Shown one piece after another: positions 1 to 55,572 of a DNA stretch of 64,000 bases. This stretch comes from Scyliorhinus canicula (taxonomy: Eukaryota). Location: positions 14,590,439 to 14,654,438 of the forward strand of contig NC_052169.1 in the NCBI RefSeq assembly GCF_902713615.1. The letters are read 5' to 3'. The notes under the pieces were generated by a model that was given only the letters and a program-made list of their open reading frames with translations, searched no databases and was not told the origin of the DNA. The position numbers were made by a program, and so were the translations under genes. Numbering within the stretch: position 1 is the stretch's first letter; the number at the start of each line of letters is the position of its first letter.

Positions 1-1440
1 CCCTATGTTCTTACGTCCATTTGCTTCAGAATTTGCCAGCTCTTGTCCAGCTCTGATAGCCACAGTACTAGATGTGGCTGATCGAGTTAAGTTTCTGGTC
101 ACTGATGACCCTTGCCAGAACGTACGAGGGGAGATTGGGTCGGTTAGGATTGTATTCACTGGAGCTCAGAGGAATGGAAATGTGGGGGATAGCTCAGAAA
201 CCTATAAAATTCTAACAGGACTGGAAGATTGCAGGAAGGATGTTCCCAATCGTGGGGGGGCGTCCAGATCCAGGGGTCACGGTCTGAGGATACGGGATAG
301 ACCGGCGTTTGATAGGGTTCCCCACGGTAGGCTATTGCAGAAAATACGGAGGTATGGGATTCAGCGTGATTTAGCAGTTTGGATCAGAAATTGGCTCGCT
401 GATAGACGACAAAGGGTGGTGGTTGATGGGAAATGTTCAGACTGGAGTCCAGTTACTAGTGGTGCACCACAAGGATCTGTTTTGGGGCCACTGCTGTTTG
501 TCATTTTTATTAATGACCTGGAGGAGGGCGTAGAAGGATGGGTGAGTAAATTTGCAGTTGACACGAAAGTCGGTGAAGTTGTGGACAGTGCGGAAGGATG
601 TTACAAGTTACAGAGGGACATAGATAAGCTGCAGAGCTGGGCTGAGAGGTGGCAAATGGAGTTTAATGCAGAAAAGTATGAGGTGATTCACTTTGGAAGG
701 AATAACAGGAAGACAGAGTATTGGGCGAATGGTAAGATTCTTGGTAGTGTGGATGAGCAGAGAGATTTCGGTGTCCATGTACATAGATCCCTGAAAGTTG
801 CCACCCAGGTAGAGAGGGTTGTTAAGAAGGCGTACGGTGTGCTGGCTTTTATTGGTAGAGGAATTGAGTTTCGGAGCCATGAGGTCATGTTGCAGTTGTA
901 CAAAACTCTGGTGCAGCCGCATTTGGAGTATTGCGTGCAATTCTGGTCACCGCATTATAGGAAGGATGTGGAAGCATTGGAAAGGGTGCAGAGGAGATTA
1001 ATCAGGATGTTGCCTGGTATGGAGGGAAGATCTTGAGGGAAGGCTGAGGGACTTGAGGCTGTTTTTGTTAGAGAGAAGGTGGTTAAGAGGTGACTTAGTC
1101 GAGGCACACAAGATGATCAGAGGATTAGATAGGGTGGACAGTGAGAGTCTTTTTCCTCGGATGGTGATGTCTAGCACAAGGGGACATAGCTTTAAATTGA
1201 GGGGAGATAGATATAGGGCAGATGTCAGAGGTAGGTTCTTTACTCAGAGAGTAGGAAAGGCGTGGAAGCCCCACCTCCAACAGTAGTGGCCTCGCCAACA
1301 CTAAGGGCATTCAAATGGTCATTGGATAGACATATGGATGATAAGAGAATAGTGCAGATGGGCTTTAGAGTGGTTTCACAGGTCGGCGCTACATCGAGGG
1401 CCGAAGGGCCTGTACAGCAATGTAACGTTCTATGTTCTAT
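1..1440 (+). mobile_element. CR1 LINE 3' part (RT domain and 3' tail)
   Basis: ORF 5-1036 has AFDRVPH, GAPQGSVLGPLLF, FAVDTKVG and the CR1 C-terminus LYKTLVQPHLEYCVQFWSP; (TTCTATG)-type tail near 1430. Confidence 0.92.
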
Positions 1441-1442
1441 TT

Positions 1443-1702
1443 AGGACAGAGCTGAGGAGCAATGTCTTCAGCCAGTAGTGGGCCTGGGGAATTCATTACC
1501 ACGGAGGTAGTGGAGGCCAAAACATGGTATGTTTTTCAGAAGCAGTTCGATATGACACCTGGGGTGAAGGGGATCAAAGGATATGGGTGGAAGGCGGGAT
1601 CAGGCTATTGATTTGCATGATCAGCCATGATCATAGTGAATGGCGGAGCAGGCTCGAAGGGCCGAATGGCCCCCTCCTGCTCCTATTTTTCATGTTCCTC
1701 TG
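1443..1702 (+). mobile_element. CR1 LINE 3' end fragment
   Basis: Typical CR1 3' end: gatcagccatgatcat..gaatggcggagcaggctcgaagggccgaatgg. Confidence 0.75.
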
Positions 1703-2532: not shown

Positions 2533-2822
2533 GGTACGGTAGCACAGTGGTTAGCATTATTGCTTCACAGCGCCAAGTTCAATTCCCGTCTTGGGTCACT
2601 GTCGTGCGGATTCGGCACGTTCTCCCCATATCTGCGTGGGTTTCCTCCGGGTGCTCCGGTTTCCTCCCACAAGTTCCGAAAGACGTGCATGTTCGGTGAA
2701 TTGTACATTCTGAATTCTTCCTCTGTGTACCCGAACAGGCGCCTGACTGTGGCAACTAGGGGCTTATCACAGTAACTTCATTGTAGCCTACTTGTGACAC
2801 TAAAGTTTATTATTATTATTAT
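2533..2822 (+). mobile_element. V-SINE with alternative tail (tail-c, (ATT)n end)
   Basis: Head and V-domain followed by cccgaacaggcgcc..cacagtaacttcattg..cctacttgtgacac..attatt. Confidence 0.85.
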
Positions 2823-2983
2823 CAGTGATCCCCTCTTTTGTACCATTCTTGGGATGTGGGCTTTACTGACAAGAGCAACTTTTGACTGTCCTCAAGATGA
2901 ATGTGAGCCGCTTTCTCGAACCATAGCAGGTTCTTGTGGTATAAATAATCCCACAGTGCTGTTAGGCATCAAGTTCCAGAATT

Positions 2984-3284
2984 TAGCACAGTGGTTAGCA
3001 CTGTTGCTTTGCAACGCCAGGGTCCCAGGTATAATTTCCGCTTGGGTCGCTGTCTGTGCGGAGCCTGCACGTTCTCCCCGTGTCTACGTGGGTTTCCTCC
3101 GGGTGCTCCGGTTTCCTCCCACAAGTCCCGAAAGACGTGCTTGTTAGGCGAATTGGACATTCTGAATTCTCCCTCTTGTGTACCCGAACAGGCGCCGGAA
3201 TGTGGCGACGAGGGAATTTTCACAGTAACTTCAATGCAGTGTTAATGTAAGCCTACTTGTGACACTAATGAAGATTATTATTAT
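2984..3284 (+). mobile_element. V-SINE with tail-c
   Basis: Same structure as 2533-2822. Confidence 0.85.
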
Positions 3285-3511
3285 TTAAAAAAAATAAATT
3301 TAGAGTACCCAATTATTTTTTTCCCAATTAAGGGGCAATTTAGCGTGGCCAATCCACCTAACCTGCATATCTTTGGGTTGTGGGGGTGAAACCCACACAG
3401 ACACGGGGAGAATGTGCAAACTCCACACGGACAGTGACCCGAGCCGGGATTGAACCTGGGACCTGAGCGCCGTGAGGCAGCAGTGCTCACCTCTGCACCG
3501 CCGTGCTGCCC
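3285..3511 (-). mobile_element. Short V-SINE subfamily (A-rich end)
   Basis: Head, shortened V-domain (gggtttcacccccacaacc) and gggtactctaaattt end. Confidence 0.85.
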
Positions 3512-4156: not shown

Positions 4157-4935
4157 GCTATGGACCAAGAGGTTGAGTAGACTGGGACTGTACTCGTTGG
4201 AATTTAGAAGGATGAGGGGGGGTTTTATAGAAACATATAAAATTATGAAGGGAATAGATAGGATAGATGCGGGCAGGTTGTTTCCACTGGCGGGTGAAAG
4301 CAGAACTAGGGGGCATAGCCTCAAAATAAGGGGAAGTAGATTTAGGACTGAGTTTAGGAGGAACTTCTTCACCCAAAGAGTTGTGAATCTATGGAATTCC
4401 TTGCCCAGTGAAGCAGTTGAGGCTCCTTCATTAAATGCTTTCAAGATAAAGATAGATAGTTTTTTGAAGAATAAAGGGATTAAGGGTTAGAACATAGAAC
4501 AGTACAGCACAGAACAGGCCCTTCGGCCCTCGATGTTGTGCCGAACAATGATCACCCTACTTAAACCCACGTAACCCGTAGACCCATAACCCAACAATCC
4601 CCCCATTAACCTTACACTACGGGCAATTTAGCATGGCCAATCCACCTAACCCGCACATCTTTGGACTGTGGGAGGAAACCGGAGCACCCGGAGGAAACCC
4701 ACGCACACACGGGGAGGACGTGCAGACTCCACACAGACAGTGACCCAGCCGGGAATCGAACCTGGGACCCTGGAGCTGTGAAGCATTGATGCTAACCACC
4801 ATGCTACCGTGAGGCCCCATGGTGTTCGGGCCAGAAAGTGGAGCTGAGTCCACAAAAGATCAGCCATAATCTCATTGAATGGCGGAGCAGGCTCAAGGGG
4901 CCAGATGGCCGACTCCTGCTCCTAGTTCTTATGCC
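4157..4935 (+). mobile_element. CR1 LINE 3' end, split by a V-SINE
   Basis: ORF 4155-4490 RLGLYSLEFRRMRG..FFTQRVVNLWNSLP; the tail resumes at 4819. Confidence 0.88.
4489..4818 (-). mobile_element. Young V-SINE ((TTCTATG)n tail)
   Basis: Near-identical to copies at 34299-34636 and 42196-42468. Confidence 0.9.
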
Positions 4936-12892: not shown

Positions 12893-13121
12893 GATTGAAC
12901 CCGAATCTCTCCCACTCTTACCATCTGCCAGTGACACATGTCGGAAGGAGTAATAAGTTGGTACTCAACCTGTTTGGCCACGTGATGAACGCACCTTGCT
13001 TGCTCATCAAGTCTTGGGGTGGGACCCGACCCCCGAGGCTCTGGCTCAGAGTAAAGGACACTAACCTACTGCACCGCAAAGCCACGATTATGATATGGCA
13101 AAGTATTAACATAATAGTAAG

Positions 13122-13388
13122 TTATTATTGTTACAAGTAGGCTTACATTAACACCGCAATGAAGTTACTGTGAAAAGTCCACTCTGGCGCCTGTTTGGGT
13201 ACACTGAGGGAGAATTCAGAATGTCCAATTCACCTGACAGCACATTTTTCGGGACTTGTGGGAGGAAACCGGAGCACCCGGAGACACAGGGGGGAATGTG
13301 GAGACTCCGCACAGACAGTGACCCAAGCCGGGAATCGCACCCGGGACCCTGGCGCTTTGAAGCAACAGTGCTAACCAATGTGCTACCA
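13122..13388 (-). mobile_element. V-SINE with tail-c
   Basis: Reverse of head, V-domain and cttttcacagtaacttcattg tail. Confidence 0.85.
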
Positions 13389-16315: not shown

Positions 16316-18886
16316 GTTCAAGGGTAGCAGCGAGAGCAGTAACCAGGGGGCTGTCAAGAGGTAGTTTCCCGCTTTAAAAACTTACCTTACAGGAGAAGCG
16401 GCCTATTTTTTTTTTTTCCAGAGTTTTTTTTGTTTCAGAGCAGCAGGAAACCGGAAGTCGGCCGTGGGGATTTCTGGGAAAGTGTGCAGTACCTGTATAT
16501 AAGTTGGGTGGTTGATAAACCCGAGACACTACACTTGTAGTGTCCCTCATCCTCCCACCTCCTCTAACCTAAGGGGATGAGTGAATATCAGGTAAGCTCT
16601 TCCTTTCTTTTTCTTGTTTTATCTAGAGGGGATGGCAGGGAAGGCAGTGCAATGTTCCTCCTGCAGAATGTTTGAGGTGAGGGACGCCGTCAGTGTCCCT
16701 GCTGATTTCACCTGTGGGAAGTGCAGCCATCTCCAGCTCCTCAGAAACTGTGTTAGGGAACTGGAGCTGGAGTTGGATGAACTTCGGATTATTCGGGAGG
16801 TGGAGGTGGTCATAGATAGAAGCTTCAGGGATGTAGTTACTCCGAAGAATGAAGATAGATGAGTGACAGTGAGAGGGGCTGGGAGGAAGCAGTCAGTACA
16901 GGGATCCCCTGTGGTCATTCCTCTTAGTAACAAGTATACCGCTTTGGATACTGGTGGGGGATGGGGGACTTACCAGGGGCAAGCCATTGGGTACAGGTCT
17001 CTGGCACAGAGTCTGTCCCTGTTGCTCAGAAGGGAAGGGGGGAGAGGAGAAGAGCATTAGTCATTGGAGATTCCATAGTCAGGGGGATAGATAGGAAATT
17101 CTGTGGGAACGAGAGAGACTCTCGGTTGGTGTGTTGCCTCCCAGGTGCCAGGGTCCGTGATGTCTCAGATCGTGTTTTCGGGATCCTTAAGGGGGAGGGG
17201 GAGCAGCCCCAAGTCGTGGTCCACATAGGCACCAACGACATAGGTAGGAAAAGGGATAGGGATGTAAGGCAGGAATTCAGGGATCTAGGGTGGAAACTTG
17301 GAGCTAGAACAAACGGAGTTATTATCTCTGGGTTGTTACCCGTGCCATGTGCTAGCGAAACAAGGAATAGGGAGAGAGAGCAGTTGAACACGTGGCTACA
17401 GGGATGGTGCAGGAGGGAGGGTTTCAGATACCTGGATAATTGGGGCTCCTTCTGGGGTAGGTGGGACCTCTACAAATGGGACGGTCTACACCTGGACCAG
17501 AGAGGTACCAATATCCTGAGGGGGGAAATTTGCTAATGCACTTCGGGAGGGTTTCAACTAGTTCGGCAGGGGATTGGGAACCTGAATTGTCGCTCCAGTA
17601 CACAAGAAGCTGAGAATAGTGAGGTCATGAGTAAGGTTTCAAGGTTGCAGAAGTGTACCGGCAGGCAGGAAGGTGGTTTAAAGTGTGTCTACTTCAACAC
17701 CAGGAGCATCCAGAATAAGGTGGGTGAACTTGCAGCATGGGTTGGTACCTGGGACTTCGATGTTGTGGCCGTTTCGGAGGCATGGCTAGAACAGGGACAG
17801 GAATGGTTGTTGAAGGTTCCGGGGTTTAGATATTTCAGTAAGCTCAGGGAAGGTGGTAAAGAGAGGGAGGGGTGGCATTGTTAGTCAAGGACAGTATTAC
17901 AGTGGCAGAAAGGACATTTGATGAGGACTCGTCGACTGAGGTAGTATGGGCTGAGGTTGGAAACAGGAAAGGAGAGGTCACCCTGTTAGGGATTTTCGAT
18001 AGGCCTCCGAAAAGGTCCAGAGATGTAGAGGAAAGGATTGCAAAGATGATTCTGGATAGGAGCGAAAGTAACAGGGTAGTTGTTATGGGGGACTTTAACT
18101 TTCCAAATATTGAAATGAAAATTGCTTATTGTCACGAGTAGGCTTCAATTAAGTTACTGTGAAAAGCCCCTAGTCGCCACATTCCGGCGCCTGTATGGGA
18201 AGGCTGGTACGGGAATCGAACCGTGCTGCTGGCCTGCTTTAAAAGCCAGCGATTTAGCCTGGTGAGCTAAACCAGCCCTATTGACTGGAAACGCTATAGA
18301 TCGAGTACTTTAGATGGGTCCGTTTTTGTCCAATGTGTGCAGGAGGGTTTCCAGACACAGTATGCAGATAGGCCAACAAGAGGCGAGGCCACATTGGATT
18401 TGGTACTGGGTAGTGAACCAGGACAGGTGCTAGATTTGGAGGTAGGTGAGCACTTTGGTGATAGTGACCACAATTCAGTTACATTTACTTAAGTGATGGA
18501 AAGGGATAGGTATATACCGCAGGGCAAGAGTTATAGCTGGGGGAAAGGCAATTATGATGCGATGAGGCAAGACCTAGGATGCATAGGCTGGGTTAGGAAA
18601 CTGCAGGGGATGGGCACAATTGAAATGTGGAGCATGTTCAAGGAACAGCTACTGCGTGTCCTTGATAAGTATGTACCTGTCAGGCAGGGAGGAAGTGATC
18701 GAGCGAGGGAACCGTGGTTAACTAAAGCAGTTGAATCACATGTCAAGAGGAAGAAGGAGGCTTATGTAAAGATGAGACGTGGAGGTTCGGTTAGGGCGCT
18801 CAAGAGTTACAAGTTAGCTAGGAAGGACCTAAAGAGAGAGCTAAGAAGAGCCAGGAGACATGAGAAGTCTTTGGCAGGTAGGATCT
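16316..18886 (+). mobile_element. CR1 LINE 5' half: 5'UTR, ORF1 (Zn-finger and SGNH/GDSL esterase), ORF2 APE endonuclease; RT missing
   Basis: ORF1 AVQCSSCRMF..CGKC, VIGDSIVRG, HIGTNDI, DGLHL. ORF2 YFNTRSI, AVSEAWL, VMGDFNFPNI, SDHN. Stops and frameshifts present; homology ends abruptly at 18886. Confidence 0.92.
18114..18278 (-). mobile_element. Short (~165 bp) tRNA-SINE lacking the V-domain (SINE-B)
   Basis: GGGCTGGTTTAGCTCA head, GGTTCGATTCCC box B, tail-c; 6-bp TSD TATTGA (18108-18113 / 18279-18284) splits CR1 FPNIDW. Confidence 0.9.
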
Positions 18887-23382: not shown

Positions 23383-23570
23383 AGGTCTGGTTTAGCACAG
23401 CGGGCTAAATAGCTGGCTTGTAATGCAGAACAAGGCCAGCGGCGTGGGTTCAATTCCCGTACCGGCCTCCCCAAACAGGCGGCGGAATGTGGCGACTAGG
23501 GGCTTTTCACAGTAACTTCACTGAAGCCTACTTGTGACAATAAGCCGCGATTATTATTATTATATTATTA
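23383..23570 (+). mobile_element. SINE-B
   Basis: ggtttagcacag..gggttcaattcccgtacc head, tail-c and (ATT)n. Confidence 0.85.
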
Positions 23571-36431: not shown

Positions 36432-36958
36432 CCCCCACAACCAAAAGATGCACCAACTTCTGCAGATGCACCATAGAAAACATTCTTTCTGGTTGTATCA
36501 CAGCTTGGTATGGATCCTGCTCTGCCCAAGACCGCTGGAAATTGCAAAATGTCATGAATGTAGCCCAGTCCGTCATGCAAACCAGCCTCCCATCCATTGA
36601 CTCTATCTATAATTCCTGCTGCCTCAGAAAGGCAGCCAGCATAGTTAAGGACCCCACGCACCCCGGACATATTCTCTTCCACTTTCTTCCGTCAGGGAAA
36701 AGATACCAAAGTTTGAGGTCACGTACCAACCGACTCAAGAACAGCTTCTTCCCTACTGCCATCAGACTTTTGAATGGACCTACCTCGTATTAAGTGGATC
36801 TTTTCTCTGCACCTTGCCATAACTATAACATTATATTCTGCAGTCTCGCCTTCCTTCCCGATGTACGGTATGCATTGTTTATACAGCATGCAAGAAACAA
36901 TACTTTTCACTGTATACTAATGCATCTGACAATAATAAATCAAATCAAAAAAAGATCA
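36432..36958 (+). mobile_element. Rex1/Babar-type LINE 3' end
   Basis: NFCRCTIENILSGCITAWYG..DPTHPGH.LF..LPSGKRYQSL..RT.RLKNSFFPTAIRLLN; (CAAAT)n tail. Confidence 0.82.
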
Positions 36959-43981: not shown

Positions 43982-44044
43982 TTGAGAACAGGCAATCTTA
44001 TTATTATATTGCTATTGATGGGAGCTTGCCACATGTAAATGGGT

Positions 44045-44562
44045 TGGATTTGATTTGTTTATTGTCACGTGTACCGAGGTACAGAGAAAAGTATTGTTCT
44101 GCGGACAGTCCAAACAGATCATTCCATACATGAAAAAAACATAGGACACACAATAAATACACAATGTAAATACATAGACATCGGATGAAGCACACCAAGT
44201 GTGGTACTGCTCAGTAGAGAAGGTGGGTGGAGAGATCAGCTCAGTCCATAAGAGGGTCGTTCAGAAGTCTGGTAACAGCGGCGAAGAAGCTATTTTTGAA
44301 CCTGCTTGTGCATGGTCTCAGACTTTTGTATCCCCTGCCCGGTGGATGAGGTTGGAAGAGTGAGTAAGCTGGGTGGGAGGGGTCTTTGATTATGCTGCCC
44401 GCTTTCCCCAGGCAGCGGGAGGTGTAGATGGAGTCAATGGATGGGAGGCGGGTTCGTGTGACGGACTGGGCTGTGTTTACGACTCTCTGTAGTTTCTTAC
44501 GATCCTGGGCCAAGCAGTTGCCATACCAGGCTGTGATGCAGCCAGAGAGGATGCTTCCTACG
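44045..44562 (-). mobile_element. Rex1/Babar-type LINE 3' end
   Basis: SILSGCITAWYGNC..DRKKLQRVV..DPSHPAYSLF..FKNSFF; tail gtacctcggtacacgtgacaataaacaaatc. Confidence 0.82.
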
Positions 44563-44914
44563 TTAATTGGATGACTAAGCTTTAAGAGTACTTTATTGGC
44601 AGGAAAGCAGTGTGTGGCATCCTGAGATTGTGATAGGCACCACATAAATGCAGGACTTTCTTTCCTCTGGGGACCATCACACGGGAGTTGCCCAGGCTTT
44701 TTTTTCCCCCCCCAAGATTTACGATCCTAAGAATTGTTTGAAAGACCCCTCCAAGGAACAATGTGTCACAAATCTATAACTCGCTGGTCGCAGCCAGTAC
44801 AATGTGGATTTGAATGCTCATCCTGGGAGACACCAAGTAGTGATCCTGGGCTTCATCCTCGAGCCTGTGTTGAGCTTTTTCAGAGAAGTGTACGAGACCA
44901 AAGTCAGAGAGGAA

Positions 44915-45190
44915 CCAAAAGAGAAAATGCTGGAAAATCTCAGCAGGTCTGGCAGCATCTGTAGGGAGAGAAAAGAGCCAACGTTTCGAGTCCAGATGAC
45001 CCTTTGTCAAAGTTAGAGGTCAGAGTGGAAATGAGAGAGAACTAAAATGGCACTTGGCTGAAAGCTCAGCGCCAAATTTTCAAAACCGAATGGAGGTGTG
45101 CCGCAAAGCGCTCACCCAGCCGGTGTTTAGTCTCTCCCAAGCAGAGCAGGCTGCATCGCGGGCAGGGAATACAGTGTACTAAACTGCAAG
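44915..45190 (-). mobile_element. Penelope-like element remnant (family B): GIY-YIG and terminal repeat
   Basis: Minus frame LVHCIPCPRCSLLCLGETKHRLGERFAAHL (GIY-YIG signature), followed by ttgacaaagggtcatctggactcgaaacgtt. Confidence 0.75.
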
Positions 45191-45761
45191 AGGTACGGGG
45201 CTGAATTACAAATTAATCTGCCCATGGAGGGCCAAGGGGCACAGGTGCCGGTTATCGGCTCTTGGAGAGCAAGGAACGCCGATCGGAACATCAACCTCAA
45301 GAGGGTCACAAGCCAAACTGCGCAGCATCTCCAGTCTAGGCATAATGGAAGGCTGCCAGGCATGATGGGACCTGCAATTCATAGACGGTCTACACTCTAC
45401 GTACGAGAGTCCATCGGCCAGCAAAATGGAGAATGGGGACATCAGCAGTTTAGATCGGAGTTGTGACAAGAGCTGGGTTAAAAGGCAAAAATCGTGTGCA
45501 GCACGCAAGAAAGGGATCATCTCGTCAACAGGCTTTGTGATGGGTCACCCATGCAGCAACGTGAAAGGGCTTACCTTCTCACCTCAGGTCATTGCTGATT
45601 AAGTGTGGATTATCTTCTCCTGCATTGAGCCTTCACGTTTCAGAGCCGGCTGGCCCATCGCGCCGATTCTGGTTCCGAGAGCAACCCAAAGCCAAGGCCA
45701 TTGCCAAGCACCCCCCGCATTTTACATGCTTATCTCATTTCCCCTTTAAGGAGCAACAGGA

Positions 45762-46492
45762 CTAAAAGTACTGCGCTAATGGTAAGATTCTTGGCAGTGT
45801 GGATGAGCAGAGAGATCTTGGTGTCCATGTACATAGATCCCTGAAAGTTGCCACCCAGGTTGATAGGGTTAAGAAGGCGTACGGTGCGTTAGCTTTTATT
45901 GGGAGAGGGATTGAGTTTCGGAGCCATGAGGTCATGATGCAGCTGTACAAAACGCTGGTGCGGCCACATTTGGAGTATTGCGTGCAGTTCTGGTCGCTGC
46001 ATTATAGGAAGGTACAGAGGAGATTTATCAGGATGTTGCCTGGTATGGAGGGAAGATCTTATGAGGAAAGGCTGAGGGACTTGAGGCCGTTTTCGTTAGC
46101 GAGAAGAAGGTTAAGAGGTGACTTAGTAGAGGGATACAAGATGATCAGAGGATTAGATAGGGCGGACAGTCAGGATGGACAGTAGATAGGGTGGACAGTC
46201 ACCATTCCTCGGATGGTTATGTCCAGCACGAGGGGACATAGCTTTAAATTGAGGGGAGATAGATATAGGACAGATGTCAGAGGCAGGTTTTTACTCAGAG
46301 AGTAGTAAGGGCGTGGAATGCCCTGCCTGCAACAGTAGTGGACTCGCCAACATTAAGGGCATTTAAATGGTCATTGGATAAACATATGGATGATAAGGGA
46401 ATAGTGTAGATGGGCTTTAGAGGGGTTTCACAGGTTGGCGCAACATTGAGGGCCGAAGGGCCTGTACTGCGCTGTAATGTTCTATGTTCTAT
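45762..46492 (+). mobile_element. CR1 LINE 3' end
   Basis: QRDLGVHVHRSLKV..LVRPHLEYCVQFW; same subfamily as 1-1440. Confidence 0.9.
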
Positions 46493-47220
46493 GTCTCTCC
46501 CCAACACTGAGAAAATCAAACCATGTTTGGACAGCTCTCACTGCCAAAAGAATTTGCTCCTTGCCCCCCCCCTCTCTTTGAAACATCACGCAAGATGGCC
46601 ACTCGGCCCATTGTATCAATGCTTTCCCTGAAAGGAAAATAACATTCGGTGTTTCAAAACTGAAACATGCCACTGCAGTGAAACTTACGAAGTAGTCTCC
46701 ATTTTTATTTCGTACAAAGCCGATTCTTCAGAAATGCTACGCTTTAAACGGAGCATGGATATTTAGTTGAACGTCACGTACGAACAGCACTGTTTGTTAT
46801 TTTTAATGCTTTATCCGGCCGCGGATTGCTATGCCTGCAAAGGTTACCAGGGTATAAGTGGCAGATATTCCAGCCCATTATCAGAGGTTCACTGTCCTCA
46901 CCATTTCACCGTTGCGAGTGCAATATTCCCGAAAGCAGCAGAGGTATTTTCTTTCCCTCATTGCATTTTGATGAAAGAGCTGAAGTGCAATTATTGACCG
47001 TTCAAAGTACACAGTCGATGTGAGGCTTTTATCAATAAAGCTAATCATGTCGTGGGGCACCGGGCAAGGTCATTTGTCTGAGTCAAAACCGGTTGTCTTG
47101 GCTTCGCACAGACTCCCGTCCATTACTCGACGGATCTACACCTCCGTTTCCGCTCACGCTTTAATCCCCATGCCCTTAACTTTTTACACAGGGTGTGGGA
47201 GAGAGTGGGAAAGTAATGAT

Positions 47221-47393
47221 AAATGAAAATCGCTTATTGTCACGAGTAGGCTTCAATGAAGTTACTGTGAAAAGCCCCTAGTCGCCACATTCCGGCGCCT
47301 GTTCGGGGAGGCTGGTACGGGAATCGAACCGTGCTGCTGGCCTGCCTTGGTCTGCTTTAAAAGCCAGCGATATAGCTTAGTGAGCTAAACCAG
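47221..47393 (-). mobile_element. SINE-B
   Basis: Nearly identical to 27207-27394 in reverse. Confidence 0.9.
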
Positions 47394-47414
47394 TTGGTGG
47401 ACTTCCCCATTTTT

Positions 47415-48075
47415 GGACTGATGAGACAGTGGCGCAGTGCTATTATCACTGGACTAGTAATCCAGAGACCCAGGTAAATGCTCTGAGGGTCCCAGGTTCG
47501 AATCCCAGCACGACAGAGAGTCACATTTGAGCTCCATAAAAATCTAGAATTAAAAAATGGTGAAACCATTGTCAATTATTATAATAATACTAATCTTTAT
47601 TGTCATAAGTAGGCTTACATTAACACTGCAATGAAGTTACTGTGAAAATCCCCTAGTCGCCACATTCCGGCGCCTGTTCGGGTACACGGAGGGAGAATTC
47701 AGAATGTCCAATTCACCGAACCAGCACGTCTTTCGGGACTTGTGGGAGGAAACGGGAGCACCCGGAGGAAACCCACCCAGACACGGGGGGAACGTGCAGA
47801 CTCCACACCAACTGACCCAAGCTGGGAATCGAACCTGGGACCCTGGAGCTGTGAAGCAACAGTGCTAACCACTATGTTACCCATCTGGTTAAAAACCCAT
47901 CTGGTTCACTAATGTCCTTTAGGGAAGGGAATCTCCCGTCCTTACCCGGTCTGGCCTACATGTGACTCCAGACCCACAGCGATGTGGTTGACTCTGAACT
48001 GCCCCCTGAAAATGGCCTCACAAGCCACTTAGCAATCAGGGATGGACAATAAATGCTGACATTGCCAGCAATGCC
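47415..48075 (+). mobile_element. tRNA-SINE family D, split by a tail-c V-SINE (47582-47880, minus)
   Basis: Head gtggcgcagtg..ggttcgaatccc, body gggaagggaatct..ctggcctacatgtgactcc, tail gggatggacaataaatgctg. Confidence 0.7.
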
Positions 48076-51335: not shown

Positions 51336-51625
51336 GGAATATTTGGATTCTGTTCTGTGCTTGTATGAAGTCACGTAAACATTTCCTTTAGTTGAGTAGA
51401 CTGGATTGGCGGTACCTCTTTGTACACTGTCCAGATGCTGCACAGGCTGGTCAGCTGAGCGCTTTGGTATCGAGCAGCATTTTTGGGTTGGGCTCGAGAG
51501 GAAATGTCGATTGCGAGTGCTTGTCTGAGTCGGCCTCCATGCCTTGGATACCCAGCTGAAGGTTCGCTGGATCAAAGCATCGCACGTGTCCCTGCCCCCC
51601 CCCCCCCCCCCCCTCCTGAATGTAC

Positions 51626-51732
51626 CGTACCAGCCTCCCCGAACAGGCGCCGGAATGTGGCGACTAGGGGCTTTTCACAGTAACTTCATTGAAGCCTACT
51701 CGTGACAATAAGCGATTTTCATTTTCATTTCA
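51626..51732 (+). mobile_element. 5'-truncated SINE-B
   Basis: cgtaccagcctccccgaacaggcgcc, tail-c and (TTTCA)n. Confidence 0.85.
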
Positions 51733-54180
51733 TGTTTCTATCGTCTACCTCGCAGTCCTCACCCTGTGTGTTCCCAGGCTCATCCTCTGGCCTGTCACTG
51801 GAGTCATCCTCCCTGGCCTGGGACCTACCTCACTCTCCTCAGCCTCTACTGGGATCTCCTCTTTGTCAGAGTTCGATTTTGCAGGGTGCAGCATGTTGCA
51901 ATTATCAGGGATAATCGCTGTGGCGGATTTTGCAATGATCCCCCGATGTTAAGTATCAGAAGCGTATCTCTCCGCCACCATTCTCGTGGATGCATGGCCC
52001 CTGTTGTATCTCTCCTCTGTCTCAGTTTTTGAGCATCCAGCATCTGCCACCCTTATGCACGTCACCAGAGGCTGGTCATCAGTTGGGGGCATGGTCCATC
52101 AGTGCTCCCACTGTCGGTCGCCTGGACCTCTCTGCCTCTGCCACTTCCTCACCTGAGGGTGGTGTGCCCTCACCATTGTGCACTACCCATGGAGATGTAG
52201 AAGTCAATATTTTTGCCGCTTCTGGACTGTGGTAGAAAGATTCAACAATGCCCGTTCAGAAAACATAACAAGACTTTATTTAACGAACAGACTGTAGTTT
52301 ATGGCTGAAAGTTGAGGTCGGACAGCAGGGAGTGTCTCTGCTGATTCCTACTCAAGTCCGCGCTTTCACAGAGAATCAGCTCAGTATTTATACATTATCA
52401 GAATCAGGATTACGTGACTACAGCTTGGTCAGGAATTCGATCAGAAGTGCAAACATAAGCAATATCATAAAACAGGCATCACCTTGCTGACCTTTCCGGA
52501 CTCTGTCCCGTCACTCAGATCATTATTCAGTCCTTTGATGGAATGTTTAAGAGTCGGAGGAGATTTGTTTCTTCCTGGCCTTATCTTGCCGTATTTAGAC
52601 TGCTTTAGGTTATGACAAGTTTAGTCTTATCAGAATTTACGGATTCATTTCGGATCAGCTTGACCTTCTCTGATCTTATTCAGGCTTTAGGTCATGCGGA
52701 GTCAGCTTTTCTTACATTGTACCCAGTAGTTGACCAGTTTTCCCATCATGCCATTATTTACTTTGTACAACACCACAGGGAGGATGACCCAATGCCCTTC
52801 AACGTGTGAGTAACTGCGCTGGTGCCTGGCACTGAAATACAGCGTGATGCAGGTGCAGGAGCGATGTCTTCCTGGGTGCCTAATGGGGTGTCCTCGGGGC
52901 TGCCTGCAGCTAATGCGGTTAGCTCATCAGTGGAAGGAAGGCACATTATCAGTGTTTTCAATCATCATCGTCACTATACATGCTAGGTGGTATGCTGAGA
53001 CAATGGAGAGATGCTGCAGGGTGCCATTCTGCATTGGAGCTTCAGCGGGCATTCTGACAGGGAAGCCCCACTGATTAGAGGGGCCTGTGAATTCTCCCGT
53101 GTCTGCACCACTCCCATCTGGGACCTACACACTGACCTTCATCCAAGACCCATTCCCAGGGCCAGAGGAGAGAATTGGCAAACCAACTCCAGAGTATCAT
53201 TACCCTTCCTAGTCAGGACCAGCAGACCGCGGACATCGTGCCCATTGACCTCAGCAGCCACCTCGGGTCCTGGTCTTCCGGGTCAGGTGAAGTGGTCTTC
53301 TCCTCCCGGCACAGGGCATCAGGGTGTCGCGCCTGGCACTCACCTCCTAGCACCAGACAGTGACAGGCACTCATCTGTGAAACAGAGCCCACCCGACAAG
53401 CCCCCCCCCATCTTCCATGGCCGCCTGGCGTTGATGACATTCCTGGAGTTCCTGCTCTTCAGCCACACAGCGCCCTCTGCCTCCCTCAAAACTCAGGGCC
53501 TTCATTACCTGGGGTACTTTTGTATTGACAATGAGATCGCGAGTGGGGGGGGGGGGGTTTCACATCACTTCCGAGTGCGGCTCAAAGGCAAAATTCATGC
53601 CTGTGGATTCTATGATCGAGTCTGTTGCTATGACTGTCGGTCACCAGCAGAGGCAGTCTAAAGCTGCTCTGTGGAAGCTCCTTCCCTCTCACAAAACACC
53701 AGAGCTGTGGCTTCATGCTTCTCGTAAAGAACTCAAGAGTTTGAACCTTTCCTCATTTCTGGAACAGTGTGCGTATTCAAAGTCGATATATATTATTTGA
53801 CAAATTACTTGACGCGTAGCTTTTGCTTCTGTATAATTAGCTCATTTGTAAAGAAATGCACCATTAATTTTAGCCTGAATGTATCGTCGAACAGTGACTG
53901 CCTTTCAAAGAGAACAGTAGATTACAGTGAGCTGCCACGTAGCAACATTATGTGATAGAAAAAGTCAGAACTCGCCCTGGGACATGCAATTTCATTCGAG
54001 CCGACCCTGACATTGCAAGTTTCACTAGGGATACGGGGCTAATGATGGAAATTGCCTATTTTCGCTGTGAACATGAGTTAATGGTTTTGGGAAGGAGCCC
54101 AAAGTGCAAGAAACAGTGCCTGAATTTAAGGATTCAAGTAATGGAGAGATTCGCACAAACCAACTTAAATGTGAAGTAAA

Positions 54181-54942: not shown

Positions 54943-55572
54943 ACACTACCAGAAGGATGTGGATGCTTTGGAGAGGGTACAGATTCCCGTAACAGCCTCC
55001 CCGAACAGGCGCCGGAATGTGGCGACTAGGGGCTTTTCACAGTAACTTCATTGAAGCCTACTCGTGACAATAAGCGATTTTCATTTCATTTCAGAAGCGG
55101 TTTACTAGGATGTTGCCTGGTATGGAGGGCATTAGCTATGAAGAGAGGTTAGATAAACTCGGTCTGTTCTCACTTCAACGACAGAGGTTGAGAGGCGACC
55201 TGATAGAGGTCTACAAAATAATGAGTGGCATGGACAGAGTGGATAGTCAGATGCTCTTTCCTAGGGTAGGAGAGTCAGGTACTAGGGAACATAAGTTTAA
55301 AGTGTGTGGGGAAAAGTTTAGAACTGATGTGCGAGGCAATTTTTTTTTTTTTTTTTACACAGAGGGTGGCAAATATATGTAACACGCTGGCTAGGGAGGT
55401 GGTAGGAGCAGGTACGATAGCGGCATTTAAGGGTTATCTAGACAAATCTACGAATAGGGTGGGAATGGAAGGATACAGACTCAGTTACGTGCATACAATT
55501 TTAGTTTAGGCAGGTACCATGGTCAGCGCAGGCTTGTAAGGCCGAAGGGCCTGTTCCTGTGCTGTATTGTTC
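54520..55572 (+). mobile_element. CR1 LINE RT and 3' end, split by SINE-B
   Basis: SKFTDNTKIGG..KWQMEFNPGKC..LVRPHLEYCVQFWSP and tail. Confidence 0.9.
54983..55091 (+). mobile_element. 5'-truncated SINE-B
   Basis: Interrupts CR1 LERVQ|KR; CAGA duplicated at flanks. Confidence 0.85.

What the first reader, a model, noticed from the sequence alone, without database searches (positions are those of the whole stretch)
51671..51711. SINE tail-c mirrors the Rex1/Babar LINE 3' hairpin with a compensatory change: probable Rex1-mobilised SINEs
Seen: the Rex1/Babar ends (36903-36933; reverse of 44058-44092) give a combined pattern CTTTTCAC-TGTA..TACA-C-GTGACAATAA. Tail-c reads CTTTTCAC-AGTA-ACTTCATTGAAGCC-TACT-C-GTGACAATAA. 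Both fold as TCAC/GTGA, a bulged pyrimidine, then a stem whose first pair is T-A in the LINE and A-T in the SINE. The V-SINE version only lengthens the apical stem. Established: stringent LINEs recognise a 3' stem-loop, and HE1 V-SINEs are partnered with the CR1-type HER1. Inference: a V-SINE subfamily and SINE-B have switched to Rex1/Babar machinery, a partnership I do not recall being described in sharks. The LINE pattern rests on only two diverged copies.
Basis: partly seen in the sequence, partly recalled or inferred. Interest (0 to 1): 0.7.

Follow-up and report, generated by a model that had tools for sequence, protein, structure and literature searches.

The report
Shark SINE tail mimics Rex1 end
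Two families of short jumping elements in this shark-like genome end in a small hairpin that closely matches the conserved 3' end of Rex1/Babar LINEs, so they probably borrow that LINE's copying enzyme; this is a new example of a well-known kind of parasitism, not a new mechanism.

Summary
Tail-c sits at 51671-51711 exactly as quoted. It ends 11 SINE copies in the window: 6 of a short tRNA-like SINE and 5 of a V-domain SINE. Two 5'-truncated LINE copies end in the quoted relative of it. Public contigs of two species show that the LINE family's majority letter restores the TCAC/GTGA stem.

The likeness is well above chance: local alignment scores 32 against 12.7±2.4 for shuffles (0/5000), while CR1 tails in the window score at background. 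A covariance model built only from Rex1-type LINE tails ranks ten tail-c ends directly after its own training sequences. Across 17 LINE tails from sharks and distant fish the hairpin shows compensatory changes.

The LINE family carries RVT_1, the PF09004 motif, the Rex1 primer peptide FSSAFNT and 5-7-nt terminal repeats.

The partnership itself remains an inference:
- Only about 41 nt are LINE-like.
- The apex and terminal repeats differ.
- No LINE with the exact tail-c was found among nine shark copies.
- A competing fold exists.
- L2 and RTE tails could not be tested.

A Rex1-tailed SINE is already listed for a sea anemone. First readers of this scan noted the same idea on several other pieces of this genome.

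The parts
51671..51711 (+). Tail-c hairpin of the finding: lower stem TCAC/GTGA, bulged C, AGTA/TACT, apical CTTC/GAAG, then CAATAA
   Evidence: Matched end to end by the LINE-only models R1 and R2.
51625..51734 (+). 5'-truncated copy of the short tRNA-like SINE ('SINE-B'): the last ~110 nt only, including the (ATTTC)n-type terminal repeat; preceded by a poly-C run
   Evidence: Alignment A1. 100% identical over 100 nt to 47221-47320.
47221..47394 (-). Full-length SINE-B copy: tRNA-like head with B box GGTTCGATTCC, the shared ~85-nt tail module, tail-c hairpin at 47234-47274
   Evidence: Very high contig depth in all four runs.
27210..27395 (+). Full-length SINE-B copy; tail-c at 27329-27369; (ATTTC)n end
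23386..23570 (+). Full-length SINE-B copy; tail-c at 23503-23543 with a bulged T and an (ATT)n end
18113..18276 (-). Full-length SINE-B copy; tail-c at 18126-18166
54987..55092 (+). 5'-truncated SINE-B copy; tail-c at 55033-55073
47575..47881 (-). V-domain SINE with the long tail-c (47597-47650); A at 47606 on the element strand is G in the genome-wide majority
32532..32830 (+). V-domain SINE with the long tail-c (32766-32818); the one copy whose minimum-energy fold shows the LINE-like stem with a lengthened apex
2982..3290 (+). V-domain SINE with the long tail-c (3217-3268)
13085..13387 (-). V-domain SINE with the long tail-c (13125-13177); has an internal deletion
2538..2825 (+). V-domain SINE with the short tail-c (2763-2803, CTTATCAC variant) and an (ATT)n end
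36392..36955 (+). 5'-truncated Rex1/Babar-type LINE copy: ORF C-terminus 36392-36793, 3' UTR, terminal hairpin 36903-36935, (AAATC)n-type end
44045..44645 (-). 5'-truncated Rex1/Babar-type LINE copy of a second subfamily: ORF C-terminus 44241-44645, 3' UTR, terminal hairpin 44059-44093, (AAATC)n end
46410..46494 (+). CR1-type LINE 3' end, used as a positive control: shares ~55 nt and the TGTTCTA repeat with the 'tail-b' V-SINEs, but has no likeness to tail-c

Best explanation
Tail-c is a Rex1/Babar-type 3'-terminal recognition hairpin carried by two Pol III-type SINE families: a ~165-bp tRNA-like SINE and a subfamily of V-domain SINEs.

Proposed mechanism:
1. The SINE RNA ends in UUUUCAC, a stem, a bulged pyrimidine, GUGACAAUAA and a short tandem repeat.
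2. This is the architecture that ends Rex1/Babar LINE RNAs.
3. The Rex1-lineage reverse transcriptase/endonuclease binds that hairpin in trans and copies the SINE into a nicked target, starting in the terminal repeat.

The V-SINE subfamily arose from CR1-tailed (HE1-like) V-SINEs by replacement of the last ~40 nt. The two SINE families share ~85-97 nt, more than the LINE-like part. So at least one of them took the tail from the other SINE, or both took it from a LINE subfamily not sampled here.

Shown here: the sequence and architecture match, conservation and covariation of the hairpin in LINE tails, Rex1 hallmarks of the LINE family, and high copy number and youth of the SINEs.

Inferred: RT binding, trans-mobilisation and the order of the tail exchanges.
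For: - Exact anatomy.
- Genome-wide majority letter restores TCAC in the LINE end.
- SINE against Rex1 tail scores 32, or 26 for the other subfamily, against a null of ~13-14±2.5 (0/5000 and 1/5000). Against CR1 tails it scores 12-20.5 (p 0.03-0.5).
- Model R1, built from 11 LINE tails with no SINE, was searched over both strands of the whole window with filters off. It ranks ten tail-c ends directly after its two training hits, each aligned to the full model (13-20 bits, E 0.07-2.9). The shark-only model R2 gives 20.1 bits, E about 0.06.
- Minimum-energy folds of individual LINE tails from sharks and from 41-62%-identical fish relatives give the same 4-bp lower stem, 3' bulge and upper stem.
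- Covariation in LINE tails: 88.5% of cells paired against 76.5±2.3, score 0.44 against 0.21 (0/500), slid controls at most 48%. With 17 LINE and 3 SINE rows: 92.4% against 80.3±1.4.
- Lower-stem variants TCAC/GTGA, TCAT/ATGA, TCGC/GCGA and TCAG/CTGA.
- LINE family relatives have RVT_1, PF09004, a C-terminus homologous to the window ORFs, and DFSSAFNTI, the peptide encoded by the Rex1 primer RTX1-F1.
- A conserved 3' UTR followed by 5-7-nt repeats matches the published Rex1 description (PMC6274825, PMC4635592).
- SINE ends have no A-tail and no target duplications of 6 nt or more, and two copies are 5'-truncated. This fits CR1-group-type rather than L1-type insertion.
Against: - Only ~41 nt is LINE-like. 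The 45-50 nt upstream, shared by both SINE families, has no likeness to five Rex1 3' UTRs.
- None of nine shark-type LINE tails has the A-T first upper pair or the tail-c apex.
- Terminal repeats differ: LINE (AAATC)n; SINE (ATTTC)n or (ATT)n. The CR1/V-SINE control pair shares ~55 nt and the same repeat.
- Whole-window E-values of the model hits are marginal one by one, and the copies are not independent.
- With upstream context, the SINE's minimum-energy fold uses a competing GGGGCUU/AAGCCU helix, and z-scores are near 0.
- The 5' arm also has weak likeness to V-SINE body or CR1-tail sequence.
- L2, RTE and other LINE tails of this genome were not available.
Confidence: 0.6

Rival explanations
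1. The true partner is a LINE subfamily not sampled here, whose 3' UTR contains the whole ~90-nt module, including the 45-50 nt upstream of the hairpin and an (ATTTC)n or (ATT)n end. It may be another Rex1/Babar lineage or a different CR1-group clade. The Rex1 copies seen here would then be only cousins of the source.
For: - Both SINE families share 85-97 nt, but only 41 nt resemble the sampled Rex1 tails.
- The apex, the first upper pair and the terminal repeat of tail-c are absent from all nine shark LINE tails.
- The CR1/V-SINE control pair shows how long a genuine shared tail usually is.
Against: - The hairpin flanks UUUC...GAC(A)AUAAA are a hallmark of every Rex1-type tail recovered, including distant fish relatives. 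A source outside Rex1/Babar is therefore unlikely.
- SINE-to-SINE tail transfer also explains the longer shared module (PMC5499810).
- Terminal repeats vary even within SINE-B and among Rex1 lineages.
Confidence: 0.25
2. The likeness is partly chance or convergence. On this reading tail-c evolved from the V-SINE's own body or CR1-type tail and is still mobilised by CR1 (HER1-like) LINEs, which dominate this genome.
For: - The 5' arm CTTTTCACAGTAA has weak likeness to the CR1 tail (CTTCTGCACTGTAAA) and to the V-SINE body segment GGGTGCTCTTTCCAAGAG.
- The V-SINE tail-c module against tail-a scores 21-23 against a null of ~14.5-15±2.4, p 0.007-0.03.
- CR1 copies are far more frequent than Rex1 in the window.
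Against: - SINE-B against CR1 tails scores at background, while against Rex1 tails it is 0/5000.
- The 3' arm TAC-CGTGACAATAA has no CR1 counterpart.
- Models built from Rex1 tails find no CR1-tailed SINE.
- Tail-c lacks the CR1 GGCC/GGCC hairpin and the TTCTATG-type repeats.
Confidence: 0.1
3. Tail-c SINEs are mobilised by a relaxed, L1-type LINE, and the hairpin plays no part.
For: L1/Tx1-type ORF2 sequences occur in shark-like contigs. An earlier scan note mentions A-tailed V-SINE forms.
Against: No A-tail and no target-site duplication of 6 nt or more at any of nine inspected tail-c copies. All copies end in hairpin plus short tandem repeat.
Confidence: 0.03

Closest known systems
HE1 V-SINE / HER1 LINE pair of sharks and rays (Ogiwara et al. 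1999, as tabulated in PMC3747384)
   Same: Same host group and the same V-domain SINE body. The principle is the same: the SINE's 3' end copies the LINE's 3' end. CR1-tailed V-SINEs and matching CR1 LINE ends are present in this window.
   Different: Tail-c replaces the CR1-type end with a Rex1-type hairpin. The shared stretch is ~41 nt, not ~55 nt, and the terminal repeat is not shared.
UnaSINE1 / UnaL2 of eel (stringent recognition of a 3' stem-loop plus terminal repeats; reviewed in PMC3747384)
   Same: It works like this: a short conserved 3' stem-loop followed by a short tandem repeat is what the LINE enzyme recognises, and a SINE carrying it is mobilised in trans.
   Different: The LINE clade differs (L2, not Rex1). 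The UnaL2 case was shown experimentally, whereas here it is inferred. Rfam's library gave no match to tail-c or to the LINE ends.
SINE2-5_NV / Rex1-24_NV of the sea anemone Nematostella (Repbase pair listed in PMC3747384)
   Same: A tRNA-type SINE paired with a Rex1-clade LINE through its 3' end.
   Different: The host is a cnidarian, with no V-domain. I could not compare sequences because Repbase is not available here. SINEBase's LINE-derived regions cover only Bov-B, CR1 and two L2 types (PMC3531059).
CmiSINE / SacSINE1-CM tail sharing in elephant shark (PMC5499810)
   Same: Two unrelated SINE heads share a 3' module longer than the stretch that is homologous to the LINE tail. That paper takes this as evidence for SINE-to-SINE tail transfer.
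   Different: The partner there is an L2 LINE. Here the LINE-like part is Rex1-type and much shorter.

Membership tests
Rex1/Babar LINE (for the two LINE ends at 36392-36955 and 44045-44645) | Reverse transcriptase with Rex1-type conserved motifs | tested here: inconclusive
   Both window copies are truncated and lack the RT. Relatives that share their C-terminal region (44-52% identity: L013, L014, L018, L020) carry RVT_1 and DFSSAFNTI, the peptide encoded by the Rex1-specific primer RTX1-F1. P0054, 74% identical to the window ORF, has the RVT_1 end directly before PF09004. The primers do not match at DNA level.
Rex1/Babar LINE (for the two LINE ends at 36392-36955 and 44045-44645) | Conserved 3' untranslated end followed by tandem oligonucleotide repeats of 5-7 nt, variable in sequence | tested here: met
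   The UUUC-stem-GAC(A)AUAAA end is conserved in 17 tails. It is followed by repeats based on AAATC, CTTGA, ACCTTGA, TTTGAC or ATTTG units. This matches the description in PMC6274825 and PMC4635592.
Rex1/Babar LINE (for the two LINE ends at 36392-36955 and 44045-44645) | Phylogenetic placement of the RT inside the Rex1 clade, apart from CR1 and L2 | not testable with these tools
   No reference Rex1, CR1 or L2 protein set (Repbase/Dfam) is on hand. The CR1-type ORFs in the window (LEYCVQFWSP type) are clearly different from this C-terminus.
Rex1/Babar LINE (for the two LINE ends at 36392-36955 and 44045-44645) | AP endonuclease upstream of the RT and no ORF1 | not tested
   No full-length copy was recovered. 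The long ORF upstream in L001 is an unrelated L1-type element.
LINE-dependent (stringent-type) SINE with a LINE-derived 3' end | Pol III-type head (tRNA-like, A and B boxes) | tested here: inconclusive
   The SINE-B head has a cloverleaf-like layout and a canonical B box GGTTCGATTCC. The V-SINE head is the usual tRNA-like one. ARAGORN and Rfam do not call a tRNA in either.
LINE-dependent (stringent-type) SINE with a LINE-derived 3' end | 3' end homologous to the 3' end of a LINE in the same genome | tested here: met
   25 of 27 flank and stem-base letters are identical, with the same architecture. Local alignment gives 0/5000 shuffles as high. The LINE-only models retrieve the SINE ends. The homology is limited to ~41 nt.
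LINE-dependent (stringent-type) SINE with a LINE-derived 3' end | Same terminal tandem repeat as the partner LINE | tested here: not met
   The LINE ends in (AAATC)n in nine shark-type copies. SINE-B ends in (ATTTC)n or (ATT)n, and the V-SINE form in (ATT)n. Published descriptions say Rex1 repeats vary between lineages.
LINE-dependent (stringent-type) SINE with a LINE-derived 3' end | Mobilisation in trans by the partner's protein | not testable with these tools
   This needs a retrotransposition assay.
V-SINE superfamily (for the long-tail copies) | Conserved central V-domain after a tRNA-like head | tested here: met
   The 34-nt V-core matches with 0-6 mismatches in all five tail-c V copies and in 18 CR1-tailed copies. 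The bodies align up to ~95 columns after the start of the V-core.

The most novel reading that the evidence does not exclude
Rex1/Babar LINEs, from sharks to teleost-like fish, would be recognised by their own enzyme through one deeply conserved 3' stem-loop: UUUC, a 4-bp stem, a 3' bulge, an upper stem, then GAC(A)AUAAA and a 5-7-nt repeat. Shark SINEs, including a lineage of the ancient V-SINEs that left its CR1 partner, would have hijacked it. These would be the first Rex1-dependent SINEs described in a vertebrate, and they would give a defined RNA element for testing Rex1 recognition.
Probability: 0.5. Interest if true: 0.5.

Novelty: new member of a known kind. Interest (0 to 1): 0.4.

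Why it matters
SINE-LINE partnerships are known mainly for L1, L2, CR1 and RTE/Bov-B. In the papers I could search, Rex1 appears as a partner only once, in a Repbase-derived table for a sea anemone.

If shark SINEs ride on Rex1, three things follow:
- It extends tail-mediated parasitism to a further LINE clade in vertebrates.
- It gives a clean case of an old SINE superfamily (V-SINE) changing helper by swapping ~40 nt.
- It defines a small, covarying RNA hairpin as the candidate recognition element of Rex1, a LINE noted for frequent horizontal transfer.

It would also improve repeat annotation of shark genomes, where these SINEs are very abundant. It does not reveal a new mechanism.

Tried and rejected
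- Thermodynamics as support for the SINE hairpin: only the bare 41-mer is clearly better than shuffles (z -2.7). With flanks a competing helix wins and z is about 0. I therefore rest the case on comparison, not energy.
- Likeness of the SINE module upstream of the hairpin to Rex1 3' UTRs: none.
- Likeness of tail-c to CR1 tails: background for SINE-B, and weak for the V-SINE module because the V bodies are related.
- Rfam families such as the UnaL2 3' element: no match.
- tRNA callers on the SINE heads: no call.
- Target-site duplications: none of 6 nt or more.
- Rex1 PCR primers at DNA level on the fetched loci: no match; only the encoded peptide of the forward primer matches.
- L001 as a source of the Rex1 RT: its long ORF is an L1-type element, and the contig looks chimeric.
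- Viral-contig scans for tail-c and for the LINE C-terminus: nothing.
- Literature terms 'tRNA-Rex', 'SINE Rex' and 'Rex1 tail': no TE paper uses them.
- The 9-fold higher contig depth of the LINE hairpin over the adjacent UTR first suggested further SINEs with the exact Rex1 tail. The ORF bins are equally deep, so variable UTRs among Rex1 subfamilies explain it.
- The tRNA-Leu plus Rex1-tail arrangement in L029 was not used as evidence. A T5 terminator lies between the two, and only one copy is known.

Full report
**Observation.** The window contains no N.

The same tail, 95-100% identical, ends five more copies of a short SINE: 18126-, 23503+, 27329+, 47234-, 55033+. A version with 12 extra apical bases ends four V-domain SINE copies: 3217+, 13125-, 32766+, 47597-. 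One further V-SINE copy carries the short form (2763-2803).

- The short SINE ('SINE-B', ~165 bp) is a tRNA-like head with a canonical B box joined to an ~85-nt tail module.
- Four SINE-B copies are full length. Two, including the one at the finding, are 5'-truncated.
- The copies at 51625-51724 and 47221-47320 are 100% identical over 100 nt, so the family is young.

The two LINE ends lie at 36903-36935 (+) and 44059-44093 (-). Each is preceded by ~133 codons of a conserved C-terminus ending in ...RLKNSFFP.AIRLLN and by a 110-150-nt 3' UTR.

**Is the LINE pattern a family property?** I laid the contigs of four public runs, from two coded organisms, on 44000-47720.

- About 99% of the depth at 44085 reads the letter that turns CTC into CAC on the element strand.
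- No other majority difference is listed inside the hairpin. Only the best-supported rows were shown, so lower-share variants cannot be excluded.
- At 47606 the V-SINE copy's A is G in the majority, which restores GTGACAATAA.
- Seven further shark-type LINE tails came from environmental assemblies that carry shark-like host DNA (L028, L029 twice, L030, L032, L033, L034). All show CTTTTCAC, TGTA, a 4-6-nt apex, TACA, one bulged base (C, T or G), GTGACAATAA and then (AAATC)n.

**Is the likeness more than chance, and is it specific?**

- Local alignment of the SINE-B end with the LINE consensus end scores 32 against 12.7±2.4 for dinucleotide shuffles (0/5000). Against the other subfamily it scores 26 (1/5000).
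- Against the CR1-type LINE tails of the window it scores 12-20.5, at background.
- In a short-word BLAST of the 41-mer against the window, the best hit outside SINE copies is the LINE end at 44059-44073.
- I then built covariance model R1 from 11 LINE tails only and searched both strands of the whole window with filters off. After the two training LINE ends, the next ten hits are all tail-c SINE ends. Each is aligned to the full model at 13-20 bits, E 0.07-2.9. Only three weaker hits (E 4.6-8.9) lie elsewhere.
- Shark-only model R2 gives 20.1 bits, E about 0.06, for SINE-B.
- One by one these E-values are marginal, and the copies are not independent. But the hits fall exactly on SINE 3' ends next to the terminal repeat, a search space of a few hundred bases rather than 128 kb.

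**The hairpin in LINE tails.** A search of metagenome contigs with an alignment of the C-terminal region returned 26 loci at 41-62% identity. Those with a recognisable 3' end share AAGAATTTC(R), a stem-loop of 25-45 nt, (Y)GAC(W)AATAAA and a 5-7-nt repeat.

- Minimum-energy folds made sequence by sequence give the same architecture: a 4-bp lower stem starting at the last T of TTTC, a single bulged base on the 3' side, and an upper stem.
- The lower stem covaries: TCAC/GTGA, TCAT/ATGA, TCGC/GCGA, TCAG/CTGA.
- On the MAFFT alignment of 11 LINE tails, 88.5% of cells pair against 76.5±2.3 in shuffles. Six of nine pairs show changes on both sides. The covariation score is 0.44 against 0.21 (0/500), and slid controls pair at 48% or less.
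- With 17 distinct LINE rows and three SINE rows aligned to the model, 92.4% pair against 80.3±1.4. That alignment leans towards the structure.

**What the LINE is.**

- The window copies lack the RT.
- Relatives that share their C-terminus carry RVT_1, then the 42-residue PF09004 motif, then the region homologous to the window ORFs.
- Four of these relatives have DFSSAFNTI. FSSAFNT is the peptide encoded by the Rex1-specific primer RTX1-F1 (PMC4635592).
- Published descriptions of Rex1 give a conserved 3' untranslated end followed by 5-7-nt repeats of variable sequence (PMC6274825, PMC4635592). That is what these tails show.
- A tree with reference sequences could not be made. Membership in Rex1/Babar is therefore well supported but not proven.

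**Limits of the partnership claim.**

- Both SINE families share 85-97 nt, but only the last ~41 nt resemble the LINE. The 50 nt upstream have no likeness to five Rex1 3' UTRs.
- No shark LINE tail has the A-T pair or the tail-c apex.
- The LINE repeat is (AAATC)n. SINE-B has (ATTTC)n, or in one copy (ATT)n. The V-SINE form has (ATT)n.
- By contrast, the CR1 LINE ends at 46410-46494 and 1360-1445 share ~55 nt and the same repeat with the 'tail-b' V-SINEs.
- With its upstream Gs, the SINE RNA can form a competing GGGGCUU/AAGCCU helix that wins in the minimum-energy fold. The long form shows the LINE-like fold in one copy of four.
- The 5' arm also resembles, weakly, CR1-tail and V-body sequence.
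- L2 and RTE ends were not available in the window. Its LINEs are CR1 subfamilies, Rex1 and Penelope, plus a GDSL-esterase ORF of the kind that, from memory, forms ORF1 of some CR1/L2-type LINEs.
- Tail-c copies have no A-tails and no target duplications of 6 nt or more. This argues against L1-type mobilisation.

**Most likely explanation.** Tail-c is a Rex1/Babar-type recognition hairpin, and a Rex1-lineage enzyme mobilises the two SINE families (confidence 0.6).

- The V-SINE subfamily shares head, V-domain and early body with the CR1-tailed V-SINEs and differs at the end. This fits a change of helper by tail replacement, a process described for other SINEs (PMC5499810).
- The shared module is longer than the LINE-like part. 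So at least one SINE took the tail from the other, or both copied a Rex1 subfamily not sampled here. That second option is the main rival (0.25).

**Novelty.**

- Sharing of LINE 3' ends by SINEs, stringent recognition of a 3' stem-loop and tail exchange are all established (PMC3747384, PMC5499810).
- That review's table pairs HE1 V-SINEs with HER1 in sharks. It lists one Rex1 partner, for a sea anemone SINE.
- SINEBase's LINE-derived regions cover Bov-B, CR1 and L2 only.
- My searches found no Rex1-tailed SINE in sharks or other vertebrates.
- This is therefore a new member of a known kind.
- First readers of this scan noted the same idea on several other pieces of this genome. One follow-up on V-SINE tail swapping judged it a known process. 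I did not use these notes as evidence.

Noticed in passing
L029:1090-1320 (-): An intact tRNA-Leu(TAA) called by ARAGORN (1234-1315) is followed after 15 nt, including a T5 run, by ~130 nt of Rex1 3' UTR, the hairpin and (AAATC)n. This is either a 5'-truncated LINE copy that landed beside a tRNA gene or a nascent tRNA-plus-Rex1-tail SINE. The same hairpin plus 45 nt of flank recurs at L029:76-158, so the contig may be partly misassembled. The head is absent from the window.
   Followed up: partly
window 1360-1445 and 46410-46494: Two CR1-type LINE copies end in GAGGGCCGAAGGGCCTGTAC... plus (TGTTCTA)n. This is the same end as the 'tail-b' V-SINEs at 4667, 34494 and 42373, and serves as an internal positive control for SINE/LINE tail sharing of ~55 nt including the repeat.
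   Followed up: partly
window 44000-44650: Summed contig depth of the Rex1 terminal hairpin (~715,000 in run X1) and of the ORF C-terminus is about 9 times that of the 3' UTR 20 nt upstream (~83,000). Several Rex1 subfamilies seem to share the ORF end and hairpin but differ in the UTR.
   Followed up: partly
window 16961-17536 (+): A 191-codon ORF with a GDSL-lipase/esterase domain (Pfam E 5e-12). From memory, this is the kind of domain found in ORF1 of some CR1/L2-type LINEs. Its element was not delimited.
   Followed up: no
L001: This environmental contig joins an L1-type ORF2 end (CCHC-type C-terminus), a Rex1 C-terminal fragment whose tail breaks off inside the hairpin, and OmpA-family genes. 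It is probably a chimeric assembly of host and bacterial DNA.
   Followed up: partly
window 51594-51614: A run of about 20 C lies directly upstream of the 5'-truncated SINE-B copy at the finding. Its origin was not examined.
   Followed up: no
window 23386-23570 and 2538-2825: Hairpin form and terminal repeat are not tied to the SINE head. One SINE-B copy has a bulged T and an (ATT)n end like the V-SINE form, and one V-SINE copy has the short hairpin. This suggests repeated exchange or conversion between the two families.
   Followed up: partly
window 51661-51700 (and all tail-c copies): The four Gs before CTTTTCAC can pair with AAGCCU in the 3' half of the apex (GGGGCUU/AAGCCU). This helix excludes the LINE-like fold and could act as an alternative conformation.
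   Followed up: partly
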